A stretch of DNA of 64,000 bases from Octopus bimaculoides (GCF_001194135.2 NC_068981.1:154332741-154396740); one strand, 5' to 3'; shown: positions 16,408 to 64,000, numbered from the stretch's first letter. A program made the numbers and translations. Notes: generated from the letters alone by a model not told the origin.

Positions 16408-17510
16408 ACCATCATCCTCATTTAATGTCCACTTTCCATGCTGGCATGGGTAGGATGGTTTGATAAGGAATGTTGAGCTGCAAGATTACATTGAGCTCTA
16501 GTGTCATCTTTGACATGGCTTCTATTGCTGGATTCCCTTCCTAATGCCAACCACTTTCCAGAGAATGTACTGAGTGCTTTTTTCATACTACTTGCACTAG
16601 TGAGATTGCTGTGTAACTTGTATGACAGCAAAAAAACAGAGTAAAAAGAAAAGGAAAAAGCTCCTACTATTAAAAGGGAATATTTGGGATGGAAAGGTGG
16701 TGATGGGTGGCTGTATGCCAGTTGTTGAAAGGGAGAAGCACAGGTGTTTTGTTATAGAGGAGATAAGGCAAAAATAATGATGGGGTACTAGAACAAACTC
16801 TCAAGGAACAAGAAGGTGAACATAAGAAGAGACATGCACAGTGGATCATGGGAGGGGATGAGAGAATGGATGCTTTAAGAGTGTGATGAGGGAGTAAACA
16901 AGTGGAGGTAGGGGTTAATGTTAAATTTTTGGAGGGGATAAAATGTAATATTTGTGATATTGCCCTCGGGTGAGTACAACAACTGCTTAGTACCACAAAT
17001 AATGGGGAAGAAATGCTTGATGTGTCAGGGAACAGGGTTAGGGTTAGGGTTAGGGTTTGTTGGGATTCCTCAAGAATTGCCTACTGCAGGAAAGATAACT
17101 GAGACAGCTGTAGTTACTACAGTTGCAAGTATAGATCCAAGTGACAGGGCTTTTAGGATACAATTTTTGTTGTAATGAGTGGTTTTAGGATATAATTTTT
17201 GTTGTAATGAGTCATCTTGAGCACAGTAAAACATCACTCATCTTGGTCCTTTGTCATCTCCTCCATAGGGCTCAACATCTTGAAATCAGCCCTCAGTATT
17301 TCACCCCATGTCTTCCTGGGTCTCCCTCAACCACGAGTTTCATCCAATTCAAGCAATTGACACTTATTTATGCAACTGTTGTCATCCATACACATCACAT
17401 GTAGTCATCTCTCTTGCATGCTACATATAATTCCTCTTATGACTAACATTTTTCTCAATACATTTGCGCTTTATCAATCAGGCACACTCACATTGCGCAT
17501 CTAGTGGAGT
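16406..17510 (-). mobile_element. Old RTE-clade LINE 3' fragment, interrupted by the telomere/exon insertion
   Basis: The minus strand of about 17300-17420 gives LHVMCMDD and RG*GRPRKTWG (RTE C-terminal GHV-x-RM...GRGRPRKTW pattern). 16406-16630 is the inverted 3' tail. Confidence 0.65.
17032..17149 (+). other. Composite insertion: ACAGGG + (TTAGGG)3 + exact 87-bp copy of exon sequence 21511-21597 + G + ACAGGG
   Basis: Base-by-base comparison shows 17056-17142 is identical to 21511-21597. TTAGGG occurs at 17038-43, 17044-49 and 17050-55. ACAGGG occurs at 17032-37 and 17144-49. Confidence 0.9.
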
Positions 17511-19317
17511 GTACTAACTCCATTCCTGCATTCAGCGTCCACGTCTCAGTAAACACATGCATGTGTGTGTGTGCGCGCGCGTGCACACACACACACACAC
17601 ACGTACATACATGTGTGTGTGTGTGTGTTTTGCAGTAGAGGAGGAACCTGTCTACCTCAGGTGAAGAGAAATATAAGATGAAGATATGATCGGTATATCC
17701 TCAAGTTACGGGAAGGTGTATATGGTGAAGTGGACTGAGGATGGGAGGGGTGAGTGGGTGGATAAATTCTGAGATTGCAAAACAGAGTGGGAGATGGAGG
17801 AGGGAATGTAGTGAATGGGCACAGGTAGAGAGATGGGGTATTAGGAGGATATGTTGTGGGGAAGATACACACAAATGTACTCAGTTTTATTAAGTGGTAA
17901 GGAAAGACAACAAATGTTTAATTTTAGAGAATACATTACCTTTAGTATTGGTGTGAACTAAGAAAAAAAAAATGCATGTGTCAAGCTAGCTATTAGAACT
18001 GAAATCAATCAGAAAATATATTGATGAAAATTAAAGATGGCATTAACTCTCCACTCATTATTCTATTTATTACTAGCTTATTTCAGAATTGTATCGACTA
18101 TTATTAGCATAAGCCTAAGTTATCAATGGTATAAAAATACTAAATATTAACTGAACTTTATATTTTAGCTTCTTTTGCAACTATTATAAAAGGATTTACA
18201 AATTAGAAATTGTTACATTTTCCTAATTAGCTGCTTCAGATTGTTGTTTACATTTATTACTTGTTTCTAATTCATTACATTACTCGGGTGTTTATCTATT
18301 TCTAAAATTTATTCAAACTGTCAAATCTTGGATCATTCACACAATTTTCCTATCTGGTACCTGATATTAAACTGTAAATATTTTATGTAAGACAGCACTT
18401 TTTGTTGCAGAAATGTGATAAATACATTTATTTTTTATATTTATCTGTTAGCTATAAATACAATGCTGTTTTGTTTGTTTCAAAATATTTAAGGCCAAAG
18501 CGGATGGGATTGGCTTGTAACCTGTTGAGATATTTCTAGGGAGGAAAGATTTAGTATACTTTCATTTAGGTTACTTTGGTTTTCCTTGAAGCATTGTAAA
18601 TTTACTGTCGTAGAAGAAAACAGGCAAGTGAGGTTGTATTACAGTCTATACAAGATATACGCATGTTTTAATGTTTTTTTTAATAAATGTTTCCTTACAA
18701 CTGTTGAGTTATATATATTTAACTAGTACAGCAAAGTTTATATATGTTTTATGAACTAAAAGGACACTATGTAGCTAAAGTATATTATTCCCATTGCTTA
18801 GTTGTCATATTTCTTTCTGTTTTCTGTAATCTTTGATTGGAATAGATTGTATCTATATTTTGTTTTTACAACTTAATACTGATGAGAATAGAACTGAAAA
18901 GTGTGTTTTATTTTCTCTCCTTTATATTTTAAATGTTAGTTGTAATTGTGTTAGTAATAATGAGTTGCTGAGGTTAATGAATGTCAATTCGCTTCTAGCA
19001 CCTGGGTGATGATGCTGTTTAATATACAAATAATTTCTCACCAGAACAACCAGTGCGTAACTCATTAAAGGATCTTGCCCTTATTTGTTTCATAGATCTA
19101 GCATTTGTCCATTCTCTATCTGTTAGTGTTTTGTATATTCTCAAAGAGAATAATTTAATTGTATATTTTGTAAACTTTATCATTTATTCTATTAAATTCT
19201 ATCAACTATCTTTTAAAAGTTTATCTGTATATAATGATATTCTGTGGCCACAGTTCAGTGGCTGGAGCTAGTAAAAGAATATTCATTTTGAATTTTTTTT
19301 TTTCTTTTAACTTTCAG

Positions 19318-22300
19318 TATTTGTCTGTTTCTGATGGTTCAACAAGTAATAAGACATTTTCTGAACCTTCTAATGTCAATGTAATGAGCTCACAAAATGC
19401 TTATTATGCAGCACGTAATATACCTGGTACTTCTGCTACTGGTTTAGAAGGAAAGAGAATTAGTAATATCACTACTTCAGAATCAGAAAGAGAATTAACA
19501 AGTGAAAGTGAAAGATTTATTTGCAATGCAAAACCTAAGATACCATCTTATGCAAAAGTGCGAAGCACTAGTTCAAAAGCTATGGATTCTCAACAGCCAA
19601 ATATCTCTTCAATACCCACTGAGCCTCAGAAGAATGATTTTACCACAGATCATGTTCAACAATCTCTTTATTCATCAAAAAATGCAATAAAATTATCAAA
19701 TACTGCAGAAACAACTCACAATATACATTCTGGAGGACTGTCTATAAAAAATAAATTGGTTCACACGAATAAAAACGAAGATGTAGATTTACGATCTAAA
19801 CTAGTTTCTCATGATATATCAAAAACCATTGGTGCTAAGGTGACTAACAAAACACCATCTGTTACAACCAAAAGTACTGATGGTGCAACAGTTCCAAAAA
19901 CAGTACCTGGTGCAACAAAGAGCATTGATGCTTTAGGAGTTTCTAAAACAGCACTAACTGCTGCAAAAACTACAACTACAACAGTAACTCCTAAAACATC
20001 ACCAACTGTAATGAAAACCACCAATACTGCAGTGGTTTCCAAATCAGCACTTGCTGCCAAGAAGACCACTGATGCTACATTGGCTCCTAAAGGAGCTCCT
20101 GTTGTAACAAAATCTACTGATACTACAGTAGCTTCAAAAACATCATCTGTTACAACAAAAGCTCCTAGTACAACAGTGGTCTCCAAAACAGCACCTGTAG
20201 CAACAAAAACGATTGATGCTACAGTGGCTCCCAAAACAGCACCTGTGGCAACAAAAACGATTGGTGCTACAGTGGCCCCCAAAACAGCACCTGTGGCAAC
20301 AAAAACGAATGATGCTACAGTGGCCCCCAAAACAGCACCTGNNNNNNNNNNTGGTGCTACAGTGGCCCCCAAAACAGCACCTGTGGCAACAAAAACGAAT
20401 GATGCTACAGTGGCCCCCAAAACAGCACCTGTGGCAACAAAAACGATTGCTGCTACAGTGGCTCCTAAAACAGCACCTGTGGTAGCAAAAACTGTTGATG
20501 CTACAGTGGCCCCCAAAACAGCACCTGTGGTAACAAAAACTGTTGATGCTACAGTGGCCCCCAAAACAGCACCTGTGCCAATGAAAACTGTTGATGCTGC
20601 AGTAGCTCTTAAAACGGAATCTGTTGTAACAAAAACCACTAATGCAACATTGGTTCCTAAAACAGCTCCTGTTGCAATAGTGGCTTCCACCACTCCAACA
20701 AATATCAGTGATACTAAACTAGCTGCTGACACAACACCTTCATCAACAAGCGTCAGTAATACTACACTGATTCTAAAGACACCAACAACAGTACCAAAGA
20801 CAACAGACTCAGCAATAGGTCCTAAAATAGCAACTACTATGACAACGACCACTAAAACCTCTAGTACAACTGACCCTCTTCAGACTTTGACCTCTACAAC
20901 AAAGAGCTTAGATACAACGATGGCCCCTCAAGCCTTACCAACTGCAACAAAGCTCATACATACAACAGTGGCTTCAAAATCAGAACCTACAGCAACAGAA
21001 ATTACAGATTCTACAGCAGCTTCTCAAATACCATCAACTGTGACAATGAACACAGCTACAGAGGTGGATCAAAAAGTTCCTTATACCCTAATGGCTCCTG
21101 TAATAGCATCAACTAAAGCAAAAACCACAGATATCAAAACAGCATGCTTGGAAACAAAACCTACAGAAATTACAGCAATTTCTAAACCAACACCTACTAC
21201 AACAAAAATGTTAGATGCCACAACATCTTCAAGTACAATTCAAACTACAACAAAATCCACAGATAGCACAGTTTCTCTTAAAACACTTCCTGTTACAACA
21301 ACAGTCACAGATGCAAGTGTAACATCAGCTTCTAAAGCAATGCCTGCTACAATTACTAATGCAAATAACGTTGTACTTAGCAAAACAACTGGTATTACTT
21401 TAAAATCTCCAGAGACTACAATGTCTCCCAAAATAATACAAACTACAACAAAACCTATAGATGCTACTGTGACTGATAACTTGACCTCTGTTGTAGAAAA
21501 ACACACTGATTTTGTTGGGATTCCTCAAGAATTGCCTACTGCAGGAAAGATAACTGAGACAGCTGTAGTTACTACAGTTGCAAGTATAGATCCAAGTATT
21601 AAGACCAAACAAATAATTTCTGAACCTAAAACTGTAACTACCTCTGTTGAAAGATCAAGTGCTACTGACTCAATTACAGGACCAAAAGCTAGTGCCACAG
21701 CTGTGATTCCAACACCAGTTGCATTTACATCTGAAGGTATAGCTGTAGCCTCAAAAATAGTGACTACTGCAAGTAAGAATACCGACACAATCACAATAAC
21801 AACAACAAAAGCACCAATATCTAAAACAACAGAAACAGTGACAGTAACAAAAAGTATGACCACTCCAACTGAAACTTCATCCACCAGCACAGCTGTCACT
21901 CAGCCGACTATAACTAAACCCACTGATATTACGAAATCTGTGGATAAGATTCAAGGTGTGAATTTAGCAGCAATGAATGGAACTGTTGAAAAAATGAAAA
22001 CAGCAACTATAGAAGCTAATAAAACATCTAAGGAAATCCACAAAGCTAATACTGTTGAAACCAGTTCTATAGTGCAGAGTACTGTAAACATTAAAGATCT
22101 ATCAACTCCATCTGACATCAGTAGTATGGACAAGTTTTCTGAGACACCAACTGTGAAGTCTGATATGACAATGAACAGTAATGTATATGCACCTACAGCT
22201 GCTGATTTAGATAAAACAAATATTTCATCAATGGCACAAACTAATATTTCTTTATCTAAAACCACAAAAACATCCCTTCCTACACAAACATCAGCGACTT

Positions 22301-22829
22301 TAACAGGAACCTTAGAAAATATAGCAGTCACTGAATCTAAGGATACAGCTCACACTAAAGTATTATCTTCTGGCACTAAAACAGATGTTTCTTCTGATAC
22401 TAATGTTGTAGGCCTCACTGGGGCTTCAGAGAAAATCATAGACACTAATAAAAAGACACCTTTTTCAACATCTGACATAAAAGACAAATCATTAGAAAGA
22501 TCTGTATCAACTACTTCCTCAACGCTCATCATGTCAACAAAAACATCAAAAGACAATGATGAGAATAGAGATGAGATAAAAAAACCAGCTACTCCAAATA
22601 CTGTATCACAAATCTCTAAACATAGGAAAAGTGAAGGTTCAATTGATACTCCTCACTTAAGCATTCATCGAGGTATCTTAAAGCGCACTTCTTCTCTGCA
22701 CAAGCAAAATTCATGTTCTGAAGAATTGGATCCAGAGTTAGCAGAAGTCTTCCAGTCCAGGAGAAGTAAAGAGGAAATTGATGATTATACTTCTGAACAA
22801 GATGTTTTTGATGAAAGTCAGTTTCTTCG
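19318..22829 (+). CDS. SVIL: Giant 3512-nt coding exon (about 1170 aa; Thr/Ala/Pro/Lys/Ser-rich, repeat-containing) of the supervillin-like gene
   Basis: Lies in the uninterrupted ORF 19234-22833. Acceptor ttttttttttcttttaactttcAG (19316-17) is codon-aligned (YLSVSDG...). Donor CG|GTAAGT at 22830 (phase 2) matches the phase-2 acceptor at 25073 (CG+A = Arg). Confidence 0.8.
19828..20690 (+). repeat. Coding 48-bp (16-aa) tandem repeat, consensus (I/N/V)DATVAPKTAPVATKT, about 18 units as assembled
   Basis: gatgctacagtggcccccaaaacagcacctgtggcaacaaaaacg recurs with a 48-nt period. Central units are near-identical and flanking units are degenerate. A 10-N gap lies at 20342-20351. Confidence 0.92.
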
Positions 22830-25072
22830 GTAAGTTTACTGATACTTATGATAATCAGTGTTATACTTTATTTAAAATTATGATTCTGGAGTAAGCAATG
22901 TTTCTCCTAAGATTAAAATAAATGCTCCATCTAGCTTTAAAAACTTTATTAAAACTTTTTTTGATATTTCACAACTGAGTTTCTCTGGCTGATACCAATA
23001 TGTTAAATCTATAATATTGTTACTTGCTTAATTCCCATCACTAATTACTTTTCCTAAGTCTTAGAAATTGTTGTTTCCCTGTGACCCATTATAGCTATCA
23101 AGCATCTTTAACTTTTGATTGTCCAGCATATCAGTTGTCTAATCACTTTTGATAAATTAAAAATTTTGATTCAGTAGATTTTAACTTAGAACCTTACCCA
23201 GAGTATATATTATTGTTGCCCATTTCTTTCCTACAGATTAACTTTATATTGTATTTCTAGTAATCATCAACTACATATGCATTTCAGTTTTTAAAATAGT
23301 TAAGATTTTAGGCAAGATAGGTTTTAGATAATTATTATAACATTTTAATTTATTGATATAATGAGCTGATATTTAGAATAAAATTTAGCAATAGAATTCC
23401 TACATGAAATTATGGAATTTTTGAGGATTTGTTATATGTGACCATCGACATTCTCAGCCAGATTGGCACATAAAGGGCCAAAAATAATTCCTGAATTGTT
23501 AGGACATGGAACTCCTGCATATTCAAGGATTTTGACCAGAAGCTGTTCTTTTAAATTCAAATAGTTGTATGTTAGCAAATTAATTAACAGAGATTGCCTG
23601 AAAATAGAAACCATGTTTACCCCAATGAACATTTCACAACCAAATATGAAGGTAATGAATTAATGCTAGAAGAATCTTGATGAAGTCTAAGAAGCTGAGA
23701 ATAAAATGAACTTGAAAAGCTTCATTAAACTGATTGCTAAGGTGAATTTATGTGCACTTTTTTCTAATTTCTTTATTAATAAGAATCCAGATATTTCCCT
23801 TACAATTTGTCATTACTGATAGGGAGTCAAATATTGGTCCCATTCCTTTTATCACTATGTTTTCTTTCTCAAAGGTAAGTTAGTATTATAAGGTATTGGT
23901 TACTGAAACATTTCTCAGATGACTGTCAAGATTGATTATAATGTCAGTAGTTTCATAGTATGAAATTGATTCCAATGAATAGTTAATTAAGCACTTAAGG
24001 AGAGATCTGAACTACTTTACTCCTCTATTAGTGTGACCACTAATAGAGTAGTAAAGCACTATCATTATGCTTAATTTGACCTATTAAATACACTTCTTTT
24101 TATTAATTTAAGCAGCTAAAAATAAAATGTTTTTCACTTGGTAGAACAATGACAGCATAGATTAATGCTAATTACTATTTTGTGTCTGTATCAAACTTAA
24201 CCAATTGCTTTTTTTATACAATCTTGTGCATTCTTTATGTTATTTCTCAAATCAAACAAACAACAGGAGGAATCCAATAAAAGCAAGCTAACTGTTGACC
24301 CATGACTTTAACTGTGCCACAGCCACAAAAAAGGGAGCCTACATTATGTCCCCTTTTCAGTTTGGAGTCCATATACCCCAAATACAGTGAAGGATCATTT
24401 AAGAGTTTCCCTCTTGACAAAGATTTAAAATTTATCAAGCTCTCTGACAAATTTTGAATCTTTCAAATCTTATTACTAACATGGATTATCAAAATAGAAA
24501 AATAACATTATTTATTTGTTTTATTCATAGCATTTCATTCGTGACAATAGCCTTTCTTTTTTTTTTACCTTGATTACTTTTTTATTGAAAAATTCTTCAG
24601 GCTAACATTCTAACATTTATAAACTGAACTCATTTAGTTTCTTAAATCAAAAGTGCTTAGATTCTCCTCTTCTCCCCATTTCATATATATGCTCACATAT
24701 ACATGATTATGTATATACACATGTATTAAAACAAGCTTTTAGAACTTAAGTGCAAGGGGAAAAAATAAATTTAGTACTTACATCCATTACCAATTGAAGC
24801 TTTTTGATTTACATGACTTGTTTATGAAATTTCGCTTCTTTATAATCTTTATAAATTCATGCACTCCTTAATTAAAACCTTTGCATAATTGTATGCATAT
24901 AAATTTATGAATTTCTTTTTTCAGTTATACATTTAAATACTGTTTAATGCATGTTTTGGGGGATATAATGCAATCTTTTTATTTGTTTCTGTTTTGGTAT
25001 TCAGCTGGTAGTATAAAGAAATTGTTCTCTATTGTATCAAGATCTTACATCTATGTTTCTTATATATTTTAG

Positions 25073-26820: not shown

Positions 26821-27406
26821 TACATTATATAATGCTAACAAACATGCCGATTCATTATATTACAATGGACATATATAATCTGACTTTGGGAGCAAAATAA
26901 ACTTATGGTATCGTGGAAATTGGTATAAATTGCATAGTTATTAAGTCGGTAATTTACAAGAAAATGTGACATGATGGGAAATTTTTGTTATAAAATTTGA
27001 ATTTAGCACAATCAACTTCATAATAAAATGTACATGAGAACTATGTTTTTTTTTCTTGACCCTGAAATTTGTTGTGCAGTGTAATTGATCTTGTGCTAAA
27101 GTAAAGAAATCTTCATTATTATTATTACTTTCTTTTTTATGTTGTTGTTGTTTGTAGTAGGAAATTTCAAAATATTTCAATTGATCTCAACTCCTTTTTA
27201 TGCTTTTTTAAAAAAATAATATGCTTCTAGACAATTATTATTGTTATCTTTGCATCATCACTATTGTTACTTGGGTTTCTGTTTTGTAATCCTTGTTTTG
27301 GTTAAACAGATCTAGTTTCCTTTCATTTAGTATTTCCTGTTAGAAACAATCCCAAACTCTCTTTTCAAATACATTTTTAACAAAATTTTCTAATTCTAAA
27401 TTTCAG

Positions 27407-27607
27407 GTTAGGATCTGTTAGTAGAACTTACTTTGAAGATGTTCAAAAGAAGACTATGTTACCTGAAGAACTTTTTAATAAATTAAGTGATTTGGCTCTT
27501 AGTAAAGAAGCCTCCCAGGAAAGGAGGAAGAAATATCAACGGGGTCGAGATGACTGGCGGTCCAGGACACAACCCGTTACACAAGAAGAGGTGAAAGAAG
27601 CTGATAG
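27407..27607 (+). CDS. SVIL: Coding exon missed by the ORF track (LGSVSRTYFEDVQKKTMLPEELFNKLSDLALSKEASQERRKKYQRGRDDWRSRTQPVTQEEVKEAD)
   Basis: tttcAG acceptor at 27405-06 and AG|GTAAGA donor at 27608. 201 nt, phase 2/2, no stops. Contains the supervillin-type R-x-x-TQPVT motif. Confidence 0.9.
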
Positions 27608-28510: not shown

Positions 28511-29665
28511 AGTAGTTTTTAATAGTGGCAATATCAATAACATAGAAATTATTTCTCTGTGTTGTTTCAAAATATAAATCACTTGTATCCTTATACCATT
28601 TTCTAAATGTTGATAAAATTTAATAGAAATTAGAATTTTAAAAAGAAATTGGGAAATGTTAAACCAAAATGTTTTCTAATTCATGTTAAAATGTGTATAG
28701 TTGAGAATATTAATTCTCATAGCTTTCATTTAGTGTTTTAGCATTTTGTTCTTTTGGATATAGGACTGGAATTATATGCAACATAATGAGTTGAATAGCA
28801 TATTTCAAACATTATAAATTTTATTTTTAAAGAATCAATTGATAAAAATTTGGCAGAATAGTTTACAACTGAATTCTTTTGGTCATTCTTAACAATTGCT
28901 GGAGTTAGTGTTTATTAATGATTGCAACTTCTGATACTGAACCTTGATTACATGGTTTAGAAAATAATTTGTACAACTACATCAAAAGAGTCTGAGAGAG
29001 TTTCAATAGAAATGCTCAAGATGATCACCTAATTAATTAGAAAACAGAAGAATAAATATATAGAGTATTTATTTTGCTTTGTATTGAATGAAGAAGAAGA
29101 GGACTATATTTTCATCTTAGACACTTTGTACACTGAACAGGTCTTTAATTTATTAAAATTTAGAATTATGGATTTTACTTTAATCTTTTAAAAATGTTAG
29201 AATTCAGTTTTACATTAACTAATTAATTACTATCATATGTATTATATTTTTACATTTAAATTTTGACAAAAGTGTTAAAACAATATCATTACTTGCAGTC
29301 ACATACTGATGCCTATTATAAATATAATTGGTTTGCTGTGATATTAATGTGTAACCAATTCATTATATACCTATCTTATTTTATCTAATTTTATAAAATT
29401 TACTTGAATAAATAAGTAAACTTATGCTGGGCATTTAACCATTTATTTCTACCATGTAGATTAAACTAAAAATATTTCATTTTAAACTTATTTGGTTGTA
29501 TAAATATTTTAAATATGTTTTATTATTTTTACGTTCAAATTAAGTTTTATTTTATGATTTTCGTATTTAATGCACTTAAGAGAATCTTCTATACATAAGC
29601 TTAGCTCTTGGGGTTTAGAATCTTGTATTATAATAGTTCCTGATCAGATAGTACTTTTTTTACAG

Positions 29666-30412
29666 TTTGGAAACTGTGAGTAATTTCCGAGCTTTGGTGA
29701 TGAAACGGTCATCTATTAACATCTTTGAACAATTGAAAGATCAAGAAAAGCAACGTAAAACATATCCTGGGAAGAAAACTGAATATCCACAGCCTTACAT
29801 ACCTGAGAAAATGTCAGAGAAAAAGAGAGAGAGGTATAAAACTCTGCCAGTTACAGCAGCTGAGCTAATGGCCATCCCTGAAGGAGAGACTGTTGGGTTG
29901 GATAACTTTAAGTCTGCAATGCAAGCTCTAAGGGATTATAAAACTGATTCTGGAATTGTTTCATCTTGCTCAGATTTTGAGAGAGACTCTCAGGGTTCTG
30001 ATAGTATGAAAAACCTAGCAATTGATGCTGACATAGAAGACGATGACATTACTCATCTTAGTGTTGCTGCCAGAGCCTGTATCTTTCAAAAGCTAGAAGA
30101 AAAATCCAAAAAGTGTGCTAGTGGAGCAAAGCGTTACATCGACAGAAAGAAGCGAGAACGTTATAAAACACAGCCAGTTACTGAAGATGAAGTGAAGACT
30201 GCCTCTGAAATTGCCGAAGAAAACGTTAGTGACAGGAAACGTAATAGTATTACTGAGCAGATTGAGTATATGGAAAAAGTACATGAGGCCGAAAGGACAT
30301 CAAATACTGGATTTAAAGCATTATCAGCTGCTCCCAGTTTAGAGTCATTGTTACAGAGTGAGAATTACGAAGAAGATACGGATCACGCCACTCATAGTGA
30401 TGACCTTACCAG
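29666..30412 (+). CDS. SVIL: Coding exon with RYKTLPVT, LSVAARACIFQKLE and RYKTQPVT motifs
   Basis: tttttttacAG acceptor at 29664-65 and AG|GTAACT donor at 30413. 747 nt, phase 2/2; ORF 29667-30416. Motifs resemble the LSVAAK...F and RYQTQPVT segments I recall from the supervillin N-terminus. Confidence 0.9.
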
Positions 30413-31535
30413 GTAACTGTAACATTTCTGCCATCAAGTTTTAATACTATTAATATTTGTTGTCACTATCATCATCATCACTATCATTATTGTCCTCCTC
30501 CTCCTCCTCCTCCTCCTCCTCCTCCTCNNNNNNNNNNNNNNNNNNNNNNNNNNNNNNNNNNNNNNNNNNNNNNNNNNNNNNNNNNNNNNNNNNNNNNNNN
30601 NNNNNNNNNNNNNNNNNNNNNNNNNNNNNNNNNNNNNNNNNNNNNNNNNNNNNNNNNNNNNNNNNNNNNNNNNNNNNNNNNNNNNNNNNNNNNNNNNNNN
30701 NNNNNNNNNNNNNNNNNNNNNNNNNNNNNNNNNNNNNNNNNNNNNNNNNNNNNNNNNNNNNNNNNNNNNNNNNNNNNNNNNNNNNNNNNNNNNNNNNNNN
30801 NNNNNNNNNNNNNNNNNNNNNNNNNNNNNNNNNNNNNNNNNNNNNNNNNNNNNNNNNNNNNNNNNNNNNNNNNNNNNNNNNNNNNNNNNNNNNNNNNNNN
30901 NNNNNNNNNNNNNNNNNCCACCACCACCACTACTACTACTACTACTTCTACTTCTACTACTACTACTACTACTACTACTACAACATTTTTGGTCGCTTAG
31001 ATGCACTTTAACAAAGCACAGATTCCTTCTTCTAGCCTGCTATTTGCTTCTCTTTAAAAAAAATCTAAAACTCAAAGAAAAATACAGCAAAATAATAACT
31101 TAGTAGTTTGCTTCATTCAACTTTTCTTGCCTTAATTTTGGGACTTTTCACATTGATTCAGTCACTAATCATATGTACATTATTTACATTATTTATATTT
31201 GGTGGATATTTGTCCTCATCTTGTTTGTTGTTAACACAACTTTTTGGCTGATATACCCTCCAGCTTTCATCAGGTGTCTTGGGGAAATTTTGAACTTGGG
31301 TTCTTATTCCTAAGGTATTTTTTGATGTTATTATTCAGGACATTGCTTGGAATCGAACTTGGAATCTTGGAGTTAATAGCCTGTGTTCTTAACCACTACA
31401 CCATATGCCCATGGGCAATTATGGAGTGAATTTTAGGGCTTATAAATCTAATATTTTCCTTTCCTTCCTTAATACCAGTTCGCATATGCTATTCATATCT
31501 TGAAGGAGATATTTGCGAAGAAATGATCAAGATAT

Positions 31536-40206: not shown

Positions 40207-41685
40207 AATTGTTTTTAATTGTCAAAACATATTTTATGTTTTTGAGACATTCAAAATCACAATTCTGAAACATTTGGTTTCAGTTTTAATGCACTTGATG
40301 GCACAACGATAAGCATATATGTAAGGAGAAATTAATTTTTTTATTTTTAATTCTCTCTTAAAATAGCTGTCTTGTTTTATGGATTTTTTATATATTTGTT
40401 TCTTCAATAAAATCCAGGTCAAAAGTTGAGCCAACAGTGTGTTAAATTTAAATGTTCATAAGTTTAAAAAGCAGGCTAAAACATTTTTAGTAAATAGTTT
40501 TTTTTTTTTTTTTTGCCTAGTTTCATATAACACTAAATAAGATGTAAGTAATATATACATCTGGAGTGCTTCTTTTTATTCCATTTCAAAAGGGTTTTCT
40601 ATGAAATTGTCCTATTTGTATTTGGAAAGTAACATGCTGTTTATATGGAGTTGTGCTTAGGCACTTGTATGATAAAAAAAATAAGAAAGGTTAGAACATT
40701 ACAATTTCATGGAAAATCCTGGATATATGCAAGGTTCTGCATAATTGGTGCCAAAAGATGCAATATATATTTAGCAGAGAAATATATTCTATATCACTTA
40801 ATGCCCAGTCTATATCTGCTTGCCAATTGAAGTTGATATTTTTACTGATAAACTGCATTTGTAATTAAAAAAAACTCATGAATGCCATTGGTTACTTATC
40901 CATCATTTTCATCACCATTCCTTCACATCATCCATGATTGCAGGTATATACTTGCATACTTATGTGAACCCTTGATATGATTTAATTATATAGATCCTAA
41001 TAATGGACACTGTTACACATAATGAACACTACACACTTTTGAGCATTTTAATTATGTATGCAAACAATAATACATAATCTGTATATATTAACTTTTGGTT
41101 ACATACCAGTCTTCTATAAAAGTAAAGTCCAAGCTTGGAATGCAAGAAGAAATTACCCATGCCTAAAGTTTTTATTTCTACAACTGAAAATAATGTTACT
41201 AAATTGCAACATTTTCATCTATGCTTTAATAAGCATGTAAGAAAAATATCTATAAAAATGTGTAAATATTGCTTATCTTCTGAAGAGAGTTAAATAGAAC
41301 ATTAGAACTTGGCATTGCTTCAGTATGGCCATAACCATAATAAATATAAAATAATGAAAAAAGGTGCTAAAACTTTTCAATTTAAATTTATACTTAAAAG
41401 TAAATTTTTGGAATGTGTTTCAATATACAGAACATAATTTTTTTTTATCAAATTCACTTTAGTTGGTATTGAAAATTGATATAATCATAAAGTTGTCATT
41501 TGTTGGGTTTAAAATATTCTTTATTTTAATATTTGGGAAATTATTAGATACATGTGTCTTGAATCGCCTTTGTTATCAATTTTTATTTTCCATTTTATCA
41601 TTTAGTAATTATAATTTTCTCTTGATATTCATTCCAGCTGAAATTTTTCAATTTTTATGTTTTTGTACTATATTTTCTTTTCTAG

Positions 41686-41812
41686 ACAAAGTTTGGCTGA
41701 TAAAGTAAAACTCTTCTCTTCTACCAAAACATCAACTGAAAAAGCAAACCGTTCTGACGCTCCTGTTATTCGACGAAAAAATCGAAAAGTTGCTTCTCGC
41801 TTCAACACTCAG
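41686..41812 (+). CDS. SVIL: Coding exon missed by the ORF track (RQSLADKVKLFSSTKTSTEKANRSDAPVIRRKNRKVASRFNTQ)
   Basis: ttttcttttctAG acceptor at 41684-85 and CAG|GTATTT donor at 41813. 127 nt, phase 2/0. SLADKVKLF...RFNTQ resembles supervillin LAEKLALF...RYQTQ (from recall). Confidence 0.9.
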
Positions 41813-42060
41813 GTATTTAATAATATTTAAATTTGCTACTATTTTTGTTTCCTTTTTTTCAAAACAATTTTTTGATATTTTGATTTAAATTTTAAAAAGA
41901 AGCAATAACTAAGTATACTACATGATACATGCTGGGGAAGGTATCTATATTAGATTGTTTCCTGTATGTTTTATGATTCTGATCATGTGGAAGTGCAAAA
42001 GTGTAGAAGAATAACAAGAGTGAGACAGATTCAGCAAATTTATGTTATATTATTAATCCA

Positions 42061-42230: not shown

Positions 42231-42972
42231 CCTTGAAGATCATGAGCATAGTGGATGCCCATCTGTCATCGATGATGTTCAGTTAAAGACCGTCATTGAG
42301 AAAGATCCACGTAAAACCACTTGAGAACTGGCAAAAGAACTTCAAATTAGCCAGAAAACTGCCTGCAATCCTTTGCATGTGATTGGAAAATCAAAAAAGC
42401 TCGATAAATGGGTACCACATAATTTGAATGAAAATCAGAAAATGTGCAGATATGAAATTTGCTTGTCACTTCTCTATAACCAGACCGTTCCATTTCTCGA
42501 ATGTATTGTAACTTACGATGAAAAGTGGATTCTGTGCAATAATAAAAAAATGTTCTTCGCAGTGGTTGGACCAAAATGAAGCATCAAAAATCTTCCCTAA
42601 ACCCAAATACTTCAAGAAGAAAGTTATGGGGAGTGTTTGGTGATGTACTGCTGGATTCATCCACTATAACTTCTTAAAACCTAGAAAAAACCATTACTAC
42701 AGAAACATATTGCCATGAAATTGCCAAAATGAACAAAATACTGCTATTCCTCTGTTCCAGCATGTATCATGTAGTATACTTAGTTATTGCTTCTTTTTAA
42801 AATTTAAATCAAGAGAAGAGAGCCAATCATTCTTCATGACAATGCTCGACCACACGTTTCATTAATGACTCTCCAGAAATTGAAGAAACTTGGCTACAAA
42901 GTTCTTCCCCACCCAGCTTATTCCCCAGACCTTTTTCCTACCAACTACTACTTTTTCAAGCATCATGATGCT
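42231..42972 (+). mobile_element. Mariner transposase pseudogene fragment (D,D34D type), truncated by a gap
   Basis: KWVPHNL, IVTYDEKWI, ILHDNARPH and HPAYSPDL motifs across ORFs 42373-42579 and 42865-. Contains frameshifts and stops and runs into the N gap at 42973. Confidence 0.93.
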
Positions 42973-53034: not shown

Positions 53035-53281
53035 CCTGTTACTTCTGAAGAAATGGAGAGTGTGTTTCGTATTTCTCCTTTGGCAATGAGCCTTGTAAAA
53101 CCACCAGATCCAGAAATTTTGAAAGGATTGCCATTAAATGCTCAAAGAGAGCTCATTGCCCAGCATGCAGAAGCTTGTTTATCTCAACAAGGGTCCAGAG
53201 CAAACTCACGTCCAGGATCACAAGCTGGTTCCCGAAGAGGATCTCTTGAAGAACATGAGCAAAGTAAACTAGAAACAAATG
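53035..53281 (+). CDS. SVIL: Coding exon (PVTSEEMESVFRISPLAMSLVKPPDPEILKGLPLNAQRELIAQHAEACLSQQGSRANSRPGSQAGSRRGSLEEHEQSKLETN)
   Basis: tttttccattttAG acceptor at 53033-34 and G|GTATTG donor at 53282. 247 nt, phase 0/1. Completes the RFNTQ|PVT motif begun in the previous exon. Overlaps ORF 53053-53340. Confidence 0.88.
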
Positions 53282-57344: not shown

Positions 57345-57513
57345 ACTTACAAAGCTTTGGTAAATTTGAGACTGTAGTAGAAGACACTTGCCCAAGGTGC
57401 TATGCGGTGGGACTGAACCTGGAACCATGTGGTTGGGAAGCAACCTTCTAACCACACAGCCTTGCNNNNNNNNNNTGTGGTTGGGAAGCAACCTTCTAAC
57501 CACACAGCCTTGC

Positions 57514-60466: not shown

Positions 60467-62289
60467 TGTATGTATATATGTATCGGATAGATAGATAGAT
60501 ATACACACATATGGATAATATTTAATTGATCGAGCCTGGTGCAGCCTCTGGCTCACCAGTCTTCAGTCAAATCGTCCAATCCATGCCAGCATGGAAAGCG
60601 GACGTTAAACGATGATGATGATGAAATCTCATTACTCACCTTGCTTTATAAACAATGAAAAATGTCAGCATTATTGTAAGGAGGTGACTTAAGGTTATTT
60701 TAATTATTCTTCACAATTCTTTCACCTAGGAATTTTAATTATTTTGCACAATTCTTTCTCCGAGGAATTTTGGTCCTCACAGTGACTGTCATATTTTTAG
60801 GGTTCTAAACTCGAGTGTAGGGTATGGATATGGTTAAAGTGTAATAATGTATAGTGTAATGTGCAAAAGGTCTGCCGTTGTCATTTACACACTGTTTCTT
60901 CTTGCTATTAACCTGAAACCATCCTGTGAGTTTCTTTGTGTTGTTGTTCTACCATTACTCTGAAATGTTTGTGTCCATTCTGACATAGCAATGCTCTGTC
61001 TCCATAGAAAGTGACCTCCTCATGGTAAACAAGAACTATTAATTTATCATTTTGCATTCCAATTCTAAATTTTTCATGTTCAATTTGCTGCTCCATTACA
61101 CTAATTACTAATAAATAGTGAGTGTAAACTATTTTCTGTATAAATATCTAAAAGCAGATAAATTTCATAATTTAGATCTAGTTATCGTAAGTAACTTTTT
61201 CTAAGCATGTAAATTTTTAAAGATACATAAAGAATGTTAAAAAAAAGAGCTATATGTCAATTTATTAAATTGATAAATTAACTAGGATGAGATAATTACA
61301 AAATCATATGTTTTGTTTCCTTATTTATCTCTATTCTGAAATGTTGTTACCAATATTTAGACTCGTAGAATGTTTTCCTGATCTTAGAATGTTTAATTCT
61401 TTTGAACCAACTTGCCTGAGACTGTCTTTAGTTATCTGATACAAAGCCACCAGTTTTAAACTGTTCATCTGCTTGAGATTGTTTCCTGTAATAGTGGGTA
61501 TTTATCTTCTGTTATTTATCATTAGCTTTTTATTATTATTTTTTTGTCTGATCAACACCTGCAAAGTGGATCTAAGAAGCAGCCCAAACCACTTGTAGCT
61601 TTGTAAACATTTACCTTGACTATTGAAAGTTTCCTATGCAATAAACTGTATTGATTTTTCATATATTACTATAGTAAAGTAAGTTGCATTAAATGGTCAT
61701 CATCATTATAATTCTCCTTCTCCTCCTCCTCACCACCACCACCTCTTCTACTGTTATTGCCATTCGTGTTTTTCTCTGCTTGCTTGAGTTGAACAGATCT
61801 TCTCTGCTCATTTTCACCTATTATTCTATCTCTGAAGCCAGCATGCTGAGATCTGACCTTACCATTTCTTTTCATGTCTTCTTAGACATGTACTCTTTTC
61901 ATCCTGTGCTCATTGTCCCCTCACATTATGCATTCATGTCAAAAGTCATCAATTATCTTAAAAGCTCATTCACTCTCTTGGTTCTCATATGCTTCACCTT
62001 TTAAACTAGTTAACATTCAGTAGACCATTCTTACCTCATTTCCCACTAACCTCTATTTTCCCACATTTAATAGCTATGTCTCATTATCATGCAACATCAT
62101 GCTTCATACAGTCTGTTATTTGCACTAAAAGAGAAACCTTTTGTTGTCAGTAAAGGCAACTGCTCCTTGATCTTGAACACCTATTTTACTTTAGCAACTT
62201 TGTTTTAACTAGAGCCACTTCCATCATTAAGTAGATTACCCAGGGAATGAAGTACTAATTAACTGACTCTAATGAGAATTATCAATTAA
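59602..62289. repeat. Pair of ~145-bp inverted repeats (59602-59745 and 62145-62289)
   Basis: ttattgataattctcattagagtcag...gttgcttttactaaca matches the reverse complement of tgtcagtaaaggcaac...ctctaatgagaattatcaattaa with only scattered mismatches. Confidence 0.85.
60531..60622 (+). mobile_element. 5'-truncated RTE-type tail (identical twin at 63190-63281)
   Basis: gagcctggtgcagcc...atggaaagcggacgttaaacgatgatgatgat. Confidence 0.8.
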
Positions 62290-64000
62290 ATATAAAAAAT
62301 AAAATCCTCAGATATTATAAAACAGCATCCATTAGATTTCTATATTTCTGAGATGAAGTTTTGTATTTGTCGTTAAAATGCATTATTCTATTATCAATGT
62401 CATCTTTTTATTTACACTATCCTTTGGTCAGTACATTCTCTGGACATCTTCAGATTTAAAGTCAAAAGCCAGCAGTCCCTTTTTAAATTACAAGTATCAA
62501 CCGCCACTCAGTAGAATCAATAACAGATTTGTAAACTGCTTTAAACAGCAGGCAAATCCAACAGCATCAGTGATGATTCTTATAAACAAGAACTTTGCTA
62601 TCGAATGAATATATTCCTGAGGCACAAATATCTAGCACATTGTTTAATGATTGCATTCATTACAAACATGATTCAAAAGCAAAATTCTAATTCCTTGGTG
62701 TCACTTTGTTACTGGTTGGGAAGACACACAGAATCATCTGTGGTTAATAGCTAGCCAAGAAGTGACTGGAATAAAAGTAATTTATTCCTCTCACTTCTTG
62801 ATTTTATATCAATGTTTGTGGAAGAGTGAAAAAATAACTTGTTAGGATTTAATTTAAAGAACATTAGAAAGTTGTGATCAAAGGGAAAATAACAACATTG
62901 TAACTAGTTGAATATATATGTTGAACACATATGGAACAAAACTGAATGTTACATTCTATATGGAATGTGATTTCATTTACAAAGTACCTTAGTAGACACA
63001 AAAAAAAGTTATGGTGACAAAATATATCAAATTTATAGTTTGATCTATAGGCATATTTCACCCTTTAATGAAATTTTTGACTTATTTCTATTCATAGAGT
63101 ATAAAATTGTTGAAAGTCTAATGTTTATTAGATATGTGCATATAAAAAAATGTATAGATAGATATACATTTGGATAATATTTAATTGATCGAGCCTGGTG
63201 CAGCCTCTGGCTCACCAGTCTTCAGTCAAATCGTCCAATCCATGCCAGCATGGAAAGCGGACGTTAAACGATGATGATGATAGAACTAGAAAATGATCTG
63301 ACAGTACACCCATAAAAATACAGTTTAAATAAAGCAAAAACAAAAAAAAAACATCTCCAAATGACTAATATCATTATATAACATATAGTGTAATATGTTG
63401 TTTTTATATGTGTTCAGGAATTTTTCAATGTACATTTTCCAACTCTGCAAAGAATGCCCAGTCTTCATGAAGCCGTTTAACCATAATAAGCTTATGTGTG
63501 TTGTTCCAGAATCAGTTGATAGAAATAATTACTCTTATGCTTTTGTAGCATAGAAGAATTTATCAATTAGGAGTTGCTCATAAGAGGAAGTATATGGTGT
63601 GTTGTTAAATGCAATATCAGTATATGAATCGTCAGTATATGAAAGAAATCTATTTTGTTATAGATCTTGTAGTAAAAACGGTAAGGTTTTGTTTTGGCTA
63701 TTATTAAATATTAGTGATTTCTTGATTCCTATTATTGATGATGAAAGTTGTTGCAACTGCTAATTAATGTTTCAAAATGCTGCCATGTAATGTTTAGCTA
63801 TACAGAGTTTAGTGCAATAGTTCAAGTATGTTTCATCCACTTTGCTGTCGGGCTAATGTGGTGTGGCAAAAAATTCATTGGTGATTGCAATGGTGGTGGG
63901 CAAAGTGACTTGGCTAGTGTATAGTAGTTTCAAAGCTTTAAAATGTTGTTAACCTTGGAGTTTAGGCAAGAAAAGAAAACCAATTTTATAGTTCTTTTGG

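What the first reader, a model, noticed from the sequence alone, without database searches (positions are those of the whole stretch)
17032..17149. Telomeric repeats fused to an exact 87-bp copy of the gene's own exon, inserted in the upstream intron
Seen: ACAGGG-(TTAGGG)3-[87 bp identical to coding exon 21511-21597, codon-aligned FVGIPQELPTAGKITETAVVTTVASIDPS]-G-ACAGGG. The 106-bp insert has a 6-bp direct repeat flank and sits about 4.45 kb upstream of its donor, inside an old RTE LINE. The left flank ends in ...AGGG, which could pair with a telomerase template, and the TT shared by TTAGGG and TTTGTTGGG is a junction microhomology. Established: TTAGGG is the ancestral metazoan and molluscan telomere repeat, and short interstitial telomeric arrays at repaired breaks have been attributed to telomerase in mammals. 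Inference: a double-strand break was healed by telomerase on one end and by copying the locus's own pre-mRNA/mRNA or nearby DNA on the other. That would be a cis-templated, possibly RNA-templated repair scar involving telomerase or a telomerase-related (Penelope-type) RT. 100% identity implies a recent event.
Basis: partly seen in the sequence, partly recalled or inferred. Interest (0 to 1): 0.85.

Follow-up and report, generated by a model that had tools for sequence, protein, structure and literature searches.

The report
Telomere-repeat plus exon-copy repair scar
A 106-bp patch made of three telomere repeats and an exact 87-bp copy of a nearby exon sits between two copies of a 6-bp target sequence in non-coding DNA. 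It looks like the scar of a recently repaired chromosome break, of a type already described in mammals, and shows no sign of a function.

Summary
The telomeric register is perfect for 24 nt. It takes in AGGG of the left flank and TT of the copy. The donor lies in frame in a 3,513-nt exon with canonical splice sites, in a supervillin-like gene. Just to the right, on the minus strand, lies a decayed LINE ORF2 C-terminus.

The best reading is a young germline repair scar. A staggered break left a 3' end ...AGGG. That end received telomeric repeats, probably from telomerase. Then 87 nt were copied from nearby sequence after a 2-nt microhomology switch, and the ends were joined with one filler base. 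This matches the known mammalian class of short interstitial telomeric insertions with added sequence and target duplication.

Nothing supports an RNA template or a Penelope-type enzyme. The donor lies within one exon, and that exon makes up 28% of the neighbourhood.

No same-species reads, empty allele or LINE consensus could be obtained. The junctions and the single-ACAGGG empty site therefore remain unverified.

Verdict: real, but an ordinary single example. Interest is low to moderate.

The parts
17032..17037 (+). Left copy of the 6-bp direct repeat ACAGGG. This is the inferred 3' end of the break. [quoted passage not shown]
17038..17055 (+). (TTAGGG)3, G-strand orientation. It is the only tandem telomeric repeat in the window.
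   Evidence: (0.00 expected)
17056..17142 (+). 87-bp exact copy of exon sequence 21511-21597, in the same orientation. Its first TT continues the telomeric register (2-nt junction microhomology).
   Evidence: (family D4)
17143..17143 (+). Single G matched by neither donor nor flank. It is either a filler nucleotide or a terminal misincorporation (the donor has A here).
17144..17149 (+). Right copy of ACAGGG, read as a target-site duplication or a templated copy of the flank.
21511..21597 (+). Donor: 29 in-frame codons (FVGIPQELPTAGKITETAVVTTVASIDPS) inside the giant exon.
19318..22830 (+). Giant 3,513-nt exon, phase 0-0, of a supervillin-like gene. Acceptor ...ctttcag|TAT, donor CGG|gtaagt. 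It contains 48-nt (16-aa) T/S/P/K-rich tandem repeats from 19818 to 21502.
   Evidence: gene identity
17237..17470 (-). Decayed C-terminal end of a non-LTR retrotransposon ORF2 (...GRPRKTWGEILRADFKMLSPMEEMTKDQDE). The insertion lies about 90 nt 3' of it on the minus strand, in or at the end of the element's 3' UTR.
17146..17209 (+). Two 32-bp tandem units (3 mismatches) directly next to the insertion. They are older than the insert and probably belong to the LINE tail. They contain TTTTAGGAT, a telomere-like seed.
   Evidence: (D5)
20342..20351 (.). 10-N assembly gap between the insertion and the donor, inside the tandem-repeat part of the exon. It makes the 4.45-kb distance approximate.

Best explanation
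This is a neutral, recent germline repair scar. It belongs to the kind called a short interstitial telomeric sequence (ITS) inserted at a double-strand break, in the sub-type that also shows added sequence and a target duplication.

Inferred sequence of events:
1. Non-coding DNA just 3' of an old LINE fragment, probably within an intron, read ...GTCAGGGAACAGGG|CTTTTAGG... It suffered two nicks 6 bp apart, or a staggered break, that left 3' overhangs ACAGGG-3' on the + strand and CCCTGT-3' on the minus strand.
2. The G-rich + strand end, with AGGG in register with the repeat, was extended by three TTAGGG repeats plus TT. Telomerase is the most likely enzyme.
3. The same 3' end switched template at a TT/AA microhomology onto nearby sequence of the same locus. 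The most likely template is the minus DNA strand of the exon about 4.5 kb downstream. A repair polymerase copied 85-87 nt (polymerase-theta or MMBIR-like synthesis).
4. The end was released and joined to the right-hand end with one filler base. Both overhangs were filled in, which produced the ACAGGG duplication.

What is shown: the sequence anatomy, the microhomologies, the donor identity and the relative ages. What is inferred: the enzymes, the order of steps and the template strand. No function is implied.
For: - Exact anatomy and uniqueness of every part.
- A perfect 24-nt telomeric register that uses 4 nt of the flank. In mammals, 1-6 in-register nucleotides at the break are strongly over-represented: 78% observed versus <=25% expected in horse (PMC7215372). 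An AGGG case is illustrated in mouse (PMC2246262).
- The same papers list 'addition of sequence' (17-20% of loci) and 'duplication' (about 4.5-16%) as standard modifications. They attribute the duplications to staggered breaks. They also describe complex ITS insertions that carry 38- and 53-bp duplications of local sequence.
- Telomerase adds repeats to programmed breaks in human cells (bioRxiv 10.1101/2022.10.31.514589, abstract).
- TTAGGG is the only experimentally determined cephalopod telomere motif (PMC13218726). The window looks cephalopod, but that rests on recall only.
- The donor is the only other copy of the 87-mer in the window, lies on the same scaffold and has the same orientation.
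- The insert lies more than 3 kb from any N gap. Its three junctions share only 0-4 nt of overlap. A k-mer graph cannot create such junctions without reads that contain them (inference).
- Zero differences in 87 bp, against 5 stops in 103 LINE codons and 3/32 mismatches between the neighbouring tandem units, mark it as a separate and much younger event.
Against: - No independent sequence of the locus was available. There were no same-species reads, no second allele, no sister species and no LINE consensus. The single-ACAGGG empty site and the junctions therefore rest on this one assembly.
- The species is not identified by any tool, so 'TTAGGG is its telomere repeat' is an assumption.
- In-register microhomology is equally expected if a telomeric DNA fragment or a TERRA cDNA was captured by microhomology-mediated joining.
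- A 4.5-kb jump is long for classical polymerase-theta templated insertions, which usually copy sequence close to the break (own knowledge).
- The right junction has no microhomology.
Confidence: 0.6

Rival explanations
1. Two-ended, RNA-templated repair. Telomerase extends the left + strand end. The right minus-strand end (CCCTGT-3', plus a C) is extended by a reverse transcriptase that copies the gene's own sense pre-mRNA or mRNA. The enzyme could be TERT, a LINE RT or another. The two new 3' ends then anneal through TT(T)/AA(A). This parallels the published TERC-ITS model, with local transcript taking the place of telomerase RNA.
For: - The geometry works. 3' overhangs on both ends, as in target-primed reverse transcription, give the 6-bp duplication.
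- The copy is in the sense orientation of a gene that spans the site or lies next to it.
- There is precedent for both break ends being extended on RNA in TERC-ITS loci (PMC2246262).
- There is precedent for RT-dependent sequence patches at I-SceI breaks, three of which were TTAGGG repeats (PMC5110952).
Against: - No diagnostic feature of RNA origin is present: no exon-exon junction, no poly(A), no transcript end.
- The donor lies inside one exon, and that exon is 28% of the +-5 kb neighbourhood. Neither 'exonic' nor 'sense' is significant.
- There is no microhomology at the supposed priming site on the right junction.
- DNA-templated copying explains the same sequence with fewer special assumptions.
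Confidence: 0.15
2. The scar is the same, but the telomeric repeats were not made by telomerase at the break. A fragment of telomeric DNA, or cDNA of the telomeric transcript TERRA, was captured and joined through AGGG/CCCT microhomology. Alternatively, a LINE reverse transcriptase jumped templates from local RNA to TERRA.
For: Both Giulotto-group papers list this as an open alternative. The 4-nt and 2-nt junction overlaps are what microhomology-mediated joining of a captured fragment would also give.
Against: - Only three perfect repeats are present, exactly in register with a G-rich 3' end.
- TERC-ITS loci and the in-register statistics in mammals favour telomerase.
- A captured double-stranded fragment would be expected in either orientation. 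The G-strand orientation seen here continues from a 3' end, as telomerase requires. With a single case this is weak evidence.
Confidence: 0.15
3. The break and the 6-bp duplication come from a mobile element, not from a random staggered break. Either a DNA transposon with a 6-bp target duplication excised and left both copies, with the gap filled by telomeric repeats and a local copy as filler DNA. Or a LINE endonuclease made the two staggered nicks and target-primed synthesis went astray.
For: - A duplication of 5 bp or more is the hallmark of element-made staggered nicks. Class 1 templated insertions are defined by it.
- The site is next to a LINE tail, and the window holds mariner and SINE copies.
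Against: - No transposon end, inverted terminal repeat, poly(A) or LINE 3' tail sequence lies between the two ACAGGG copies.
- The neighbouring LINE is long dead.
- Families with 6-bp duplications are uncommon (own knowledge).
Confidence: 0.08
4. An artefact: a chimeric molecule or a mis-resolved assembly graph placed exon sequence and telomeric repeats in this contig.
For: - The scaffold comes from a gapped assembly with 9 N runs.
- It has at least one clear overlap artefact, a 38-bp duplication around the 10-N gap at 57466-57475.
- No independent sequence could be obtained.
Against: - Three junctions lie within 118 bp and are framed by a precise 6-bp duplication of a hexamer that occurs 3 times in 64 kb.
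- The site is more than 3 kb from any gap.
- The exon path through the shared 87-mer keeps its reading frame, and the other path restores continuous flanks. Both resolutions of the repeat are therefore self-consistent.
- Random chimeras do not make target duplications.
Confidence: 0.06

Closest known systems
Short interstitial telomeric sequences inserted during double-strand-break repair (Nergadze et al. 2004, 2007, PMC2246262; Santagostino et al. 2020, PMC7215372)
   Same: A short perfect TTAGGG array at a non-terminal site. [quoted passage not shown] Complex horse loci also carry duplications of local sequence.
   Different: - It is in an invertebrate, apparently a cephalopod, rather than a mammal.
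- The array has only 3 units; the mammalian surveys required at least 4.
- The added sequence is not 'apparently random'. It traces at 100% identity to a coding exon about 4.5 kb away, in direct orientation.
- No empty orthologous locus has been examined here.
TERC-ITS loci (telomeric repeats co-inserted with retrotranscribed telomerase RNA; PMC2246262)
   Same: Telomeric repeats are joined to a second templated segment within one repair event. Short microhomologies sit at the switch points.
   Different: The second segment here is host exon sequence, not telomerase RNA. There is no evidence that it was copied from RNA.
Templated sequence insertions at breaks, class 1 and class 2 (Onozawa/Aplan; PMC5110952)
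   Same: A patch of about 100 bp copied from elsewhere in the genome fills a break. Junctions show microhomology and a filler nucleotide (class 2 traits), together with a target duplication of 5 bp or more (a class 1 trait).
   Different: It fits neither class cleanly. It has a duplication but no poly(A), no polyadenylation signal and no known endonuclease motif. The donor is local, in cis, rather than distant.
Polymerase-theta end joining and MMBIR templated insertions; filler DNA (PMC7165422, PMC8421209)
   Same: A template switch at 2-nt microhomology, copying of nearby same-chromosome sequence, and release followed by end joining.
   Different: 87 nt copied from about 4.5 kb away is longer and more distant than typical polymerase-theta insertions (own knowledge). 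It is combined with telomeric repeats.

Membership tests
Short ITS inserted at a double-strand break | Short, perfect array of the species' own telomeric hexamer at an internal chromosomal site | tested here: met
   (TTAGGG)3 at 17038-17055, with a 24-nt perfect register at 17034-17057. It is unique in the window, with 0.00 expected. Caveat: the species was not identified by a tool. TTAGGG as its telomere motif rests on the cephalopod literature and on recall that the window's SINEs look octopod.
Short ITS inserted at a double-strand break | An orthologous, allelic or repeat-consensus empty site shows that the array was inserted into continuous sequence | not testable with these tools
   No same-species or close-relative DNA was reachable. 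Protein searches, the exact-ORF look-up and two metagenome scans found nothing. No second copy of this LINE part exists in the window.
Short ITS inserted at a double-strand break | [quoted passage not shown] | tested here: met
   AGGG (4 nt) of the left ACAGGG continues the register. This depends on the empty site reconstructed from the duplication.
Short ITS inserted at a double-strand break | End-joining type modifications of the flanks (deletion, addition, duplication) | tested here: met
   An 87-bp addition plus 1 filler nt, and a 6-bp direct duplication.
TERC-ITS | The co-inserted segment is homologous to telomerase RNA outside the template | tested here: not met
   The segment is 100% identical to exon 21511-21597. 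Rfam finds no telomerase RNA or any other family in the window.
LINE-mediated retrocopy / class 1 templated insertion | Target-site duplication of at least 5 bp | tested here: met
   ACAGGG on both sides.
LINE-mediated retrocopy / class 1 templated insertion | Poly(A) or the LINE's own 3' tail at the 3' junction, and a polyadenylation signal | tested here: not met
   The copy ends ...CCAAGT-G-ACAGGG. There is no A run or repeat tail on either strand, except the (CCCTAA)3 read on the minus strand.
LINE-mediated retrocopy / class 1 templated insertion | Evidence of an RNA intermediate (spliced donor) | tested here: inconclusive
   The donor lies wholly inside one 3.5-kb exon, so no junction can be read.
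Polymerase-theta / MMBIR templated insertion | The insert is identical to nearby sequence in cis, with microhomology at the template switch | tested here: met
   The donor is about 4,455 bp downstream on the same scaffold, with a TT overlap at the switch. The right junction has no overlap.
Polymerase-theta / MMBIR templated insertion | Dependence on the polymerase or on replication restart | not testable with these tools
   This needs genetics or break-repair assays.
Penelope-like element insertion | Element sequence (RT, GIY-YIG, pseudo-LTR with hammerhead ribozyme) within the insertion | tested here: not met
   Telomeric repeats, the exon copy and 1 nt account for the whole 106-bp insert. 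There is no hammerhead or other Rfam hit in the window.
DNA transposon or gene-fragment-capturing element | Terminal inverted repeats or other element termini inside the duplication | tested here: not met
   No inverted repeat involves 17038-17143. The region's predicted folding energy is no lower than that of shuffled sequence (z = 0.45).

The most novel reading that the evidence does not exclude
The 87 nt were reverse-transcribed from the gene's own nascent transcript at a break inside that transcription unit. The enzyme was telomerase acting off its normal template, or a LINE RT. Telomerase also extended the other end. That would make this a natural, germline, cis RNA-templated repair event in an animal, analogous to TERC-ITS but using host pre-mRNA.
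Probability: 0.12. Interest if true: 0.7.

Novelty: new member of a known kind. Interest (0 to 1): 0.3.

Why it matters
If it is confirmed with reads and an empty allele, it would be a clean sequence-level example outside mammals of telomeric repeats being laid down at an internal chromosome break. I found no report of repair-type ITS insertions in molluscs in the held literature.

Its added sequence is also unusually informative. It can be traced to a local donor, which shows that telomeric-repeat addition and template-switch copying can act in turn within one repair event.

As a single scar it opens no new question. It cannot separate DNA from RNA templating. A genome-wide census of such patches could do so.

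Tried and rejected
Searches that found nothing:
1. Independent sequence of the locus.
   - Protein search with the donor-containing part of the exon: no hit at all.
   - Exact look-up of the 73-aa ORF that reads across the insert: not on record.
   - Metagenome scans for the left flank and for the LINE-tail unit: 0 matches each.
2. An empty site reconstructed from the LINE consensus.
   - No second copy of this LINE part in the window.
   - The word-indexed protein search with the remnant found nothing.
   - The exhaustive phmmer search confirmed a non-LTR ORF2 tail. Its hits cannot be turned into DNA with these tools.
3. Upstream exons, to prove the site is intronic. Related-species loci L001-L006 align only to exons from 27405 onward.
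4. Species identification from sample accessions or cluster names: nothing.

Readings considered and rejected:
5. Extended homology around the copy, which would indicate gene conversion: the match ends abruptly on both sides.
6. Secondary structure, a promoter or a known RNA at the site: none.
7. The insert arose together with the LINE insertion: rejected on age. The copy has 0/87 differences, while the LINE remnant has 5 stops in 103 codons.
8. A cryptic new exon (cag|GGAAC...CCAA|GTGACA): the pyrimidine tract is poor and the 112-nt length is not a multiple of 3. Not pursued.

Full report
**Observation**

Reading the window and extending the match computationally gives this + strand order:
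- ACAGGG, 17032-17037
- (TTAGGG)3, 17038-17055
- 87 bp, 17056-17142, identical at every base to 21511-21597
- G, 17143
- ACAGGG, 17144-17149

The identity stops abruptly on both sides (G versus T on the left, G versus A on the right). The flanks of the copy and of the donor show no further similarity, so this is not a conversion tract. The repeat finder reports the pair as a two-member, 100% family spaced 4,455 bp apart. A self-comparison of the whole window finds no third copy.

(TTAGGG)3 is unique on both strands, with 0.00 matches expected in shuffles. Tandem Repeats Finder reports four perfect AGGGTT units at 17034-17057. The telomeric register therefore uses four bases of the left flank and the first two bases of the exon copy. 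ACAGGG occurs three times on the + strand in 64 kb, and two of those are the flanking pair. One caveat applies: a 10-N gap at 20342-20351 lies between insert and donor, so the 4.45-kb distance is approximate.

**Context**

The donor lies in a 1199-codon open frame in DNA of 32.5% G+C. A canonical acceptor (...ctttcag|TAT at 19317/19318) and donor (CGG|gtaagt at 22830/22831) bound an exon of 3,513 nt in phase 0-0. The donor starts on a codon boundary. The exon carries 48-nt repeats that encode 16-residue T/S/P/K-rich units. It has no detectable homologue or Pfam domain.

The next large ORF (29667-30416) carries DUF4695. It has relatives at 40-72% identity in unnamed ENA and Logan assemblies. 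One relative is a transcript-like contig, L002. It aligns to window exons at 27405-27605, 29664-30413, 41681-41770 and 53035-53252, and continues into gelsolin repeats. The gene is therefore supervillin-like and runs on the + strand to the end of the window.

The giant exon begins at an acceptor, so at least one exon lies upstream. The insertion, 2.2 kb upstream of that acceptor, is probably intronic. I could not find the upstream exon.

**The LINE claim**

On the minus strand, 17470->17237 translates to ...SANVLRKML...GRPRKTWGEILRADFKMLSPMEEMTKDQDE, with five stops in 103 codons counted back to 17545. An exhaustive phmmer search gives 70 hits at E<=1e-3, the best at 3e-15. In the longer hits the matched stretch lies about 95 residues after a Pfam RVT_1 domain and ends about 11 residues before the protein's end. 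This is therefore the C-terminus of a non-LTR retrotransposon ORF2.

Its stop would fall near 17200. The two 32-bp tandem units at 17146-17209 would open the 3' UTR. The insertion site is then 50-90 nt into that UTR, or at its end. The RTE clade was not tested, and neither was whether the left flank is still LINE sequence. The LINE is far older than the insert. With zero differences in 87 bp, P(0 differences) is 5% at 3.4% divergence and 0.02% at 10%. The two events are separate.

**Is it an artefact?**

The site is more than 3 kb from any N run. The three junctions share only 4, 2 and 0 bases, which graph-based assembly cannot create without reads that contain them (inference). Both paths through the shared 87-mer are self-consistent: the exon keeps its frame, and the other path is framed by a rare hexamer duplicated exactly. 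The assembly does contain a genuine overlap artefact elsewhere (38 bp duplicated around the gap at 57466-57475). No independent reads could be reached. I put the artefact reading at about 6%.

**Mechanism**

Both ACAGGG copies can be kept only if the two strands were cut 6 bp apart, so that each end kept a 3' overhang: ACAGGG-3' on the + strand and CCCTGT-3' on the minus strand. That geometry also underlies target-primed reverse transcription.

A single-stranded 3' end ...AGGG is an ideal telomerase primer, and the repeats continue it in perfect register. After three repeats plus TT, the sequence switches to the exon copy at a point where the donor reads TTTT. This is a 2-nt microhomology switch. 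Copying ends after 87 nt, and one unmatched G precedes the right-hand ACAGGG.

The simplest path has three steps:
1. Telomerase extends the + strand end.
2. That end then primes on the minus DNA strand of the nearby exon and is extended by a repair polymerase.
3. The product is end-joined and the overhangs are filled in.

In this one-ended path the template cannot be the sense mRNA. In it, the right end is extended on the sense transcript and the two new ends anneal by TT/AA. Nothing in the sequence favours it. The donor lies within one exon, that exon occupies 28% of the +-5 kb neighbourhood, the orientation is a 50:50 feature, and the right junction shows no priming homology.

**Comparison with what is known**

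Nergadze et al. 2007 (PMC2246262) and Santagostino et al. 2020 (PMC7215372) showed the following in primates, rodents and horse:
- Short ITSs were inserted at break sites.
- Flank modifications were none, deletion, addition of 'random' or telomerase-RNA sequence (17-20% of loci) and direct duplication (about 4.5-16%, attributed to staggered breaks).
- In-register nucleotides at the break were far above chance.
- Some complex events carried 38- and 53-bp duplications of local sequence.

Onozawa and Aplan (PMC5110952) describe templated patches at breaks, including TTAGGG inserts at I-SceI sites. They distinguish class 1 (duplication plus poly(A), LINE-1-made) from class 2 (end-joining features). 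Telomerase adds repeats at Cas9 breaks in human cells (abstract).

The present locus has every sequence feature of the ITS-at-break class that I could test. It fails the tests for TERC-ITS, a LINE-made retrocopy (no tail), a Penelope-like element (no element sequence, no hammerhead) and a transposon (no termini). What is new is modest:
- The setting is an invertebrate. TTAGGG is the reported cephalopod motif (PMC13218726), but the assignment of this window to a cephalopod is my recall of octopus-like SINE tails, not a test.
- The 'added sequence' can be traced to a local donor.

I found no mollusc report of repair-type ITS insertions in the held literature.

**Verdict**

The repair-scar reading with telomeric-repeat addition is supported by analogy with a well-described class. 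The RNA-template and Penelope suggestions are unsupported.

This is a new member of a known kind, a single and apparently neutral event. It is of interest mainly as a seed for a genome-wide census that could test RNA versus DNA templating. Interest 0.3. The exotic reading, cis pre-mRNA-templated repair, has a probability of about 0.12.

Noticed in passing
window 42757-42812 (+) and 41880-41935 (reverse complement): A second exact local duplicate: 56 bp at 100% identity, inverted, about 820 bp apart, with unrelated flanks. The copy at 42757-42812 interrupts a mariner transposase reading frame (...YCHEIAKMNKILLFLC | 56 bp | RREPIILHDNARPH). It may be another templated (snap-back type) insertion, which would suggest that local copy-patches recur in this genome. 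Simple removal of the 56 bp does not restore the frame, and no second mariner copy was available for comparison. It lies 160 bp from a 608-N gap.
   Followed up: partly
window 57428-57465 and 57476-57513: An identical 38-bp sequence (SINE tRNA-like part) lies on both sides of a 10-N gap. This is a typical unmerged contig overlap, that is, an assembly artefact.
   Followed up: yes
window 19318-22830: A giant 3.5-kb phase 0-0 exon in a supervillin-like gene. It encodes about 25 degenerate 16-residue T/S/P/K-rich repeats (48-nt period) plus unique sequence. It has no homologue in 5.8 billion proteins and no Pfam domain. It may be a lineage-specific, mucin-like insert, and could be a cassette exon because its length is a multiple of 3.
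   Followed up: partly
window 17146-17209: A 32-bp tandem duplication (3 mismatches) lies immediately right of the insertion, at the start of the LINE 3' UTR. Each unit contains TTTTAGGAT. Together with TCAGGGAACAGGG on the left, the target was flanked by telomere-like seeds. It is unclear whether that attracted telomerase or is coincidence.
   Followed up: no
window 63154-63285 vs 60495-60625; also 16493-16626 and about 8 other sites: Multiple copies of a SINE end in ...CCAATCCATGCCAGCATGGAAAGCGGACGTTAAACGATGATGATGAT, and (CA)n or (TC)n microsatellites are frequent. From memory this resembles octopus SINEs, which is the only clue to the organism. It was not verified with any tool.
   Followed up: no
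window 16954-17175 (+): The insertion creates a 73-codon open frame that reads through the telomeric repeats (GLGLGLG) into the exon-derived FVGIPQ...IDPS peptide. There is no evidence that it is used, and no such product is on record in the assembly collection.
   Followed up: yes
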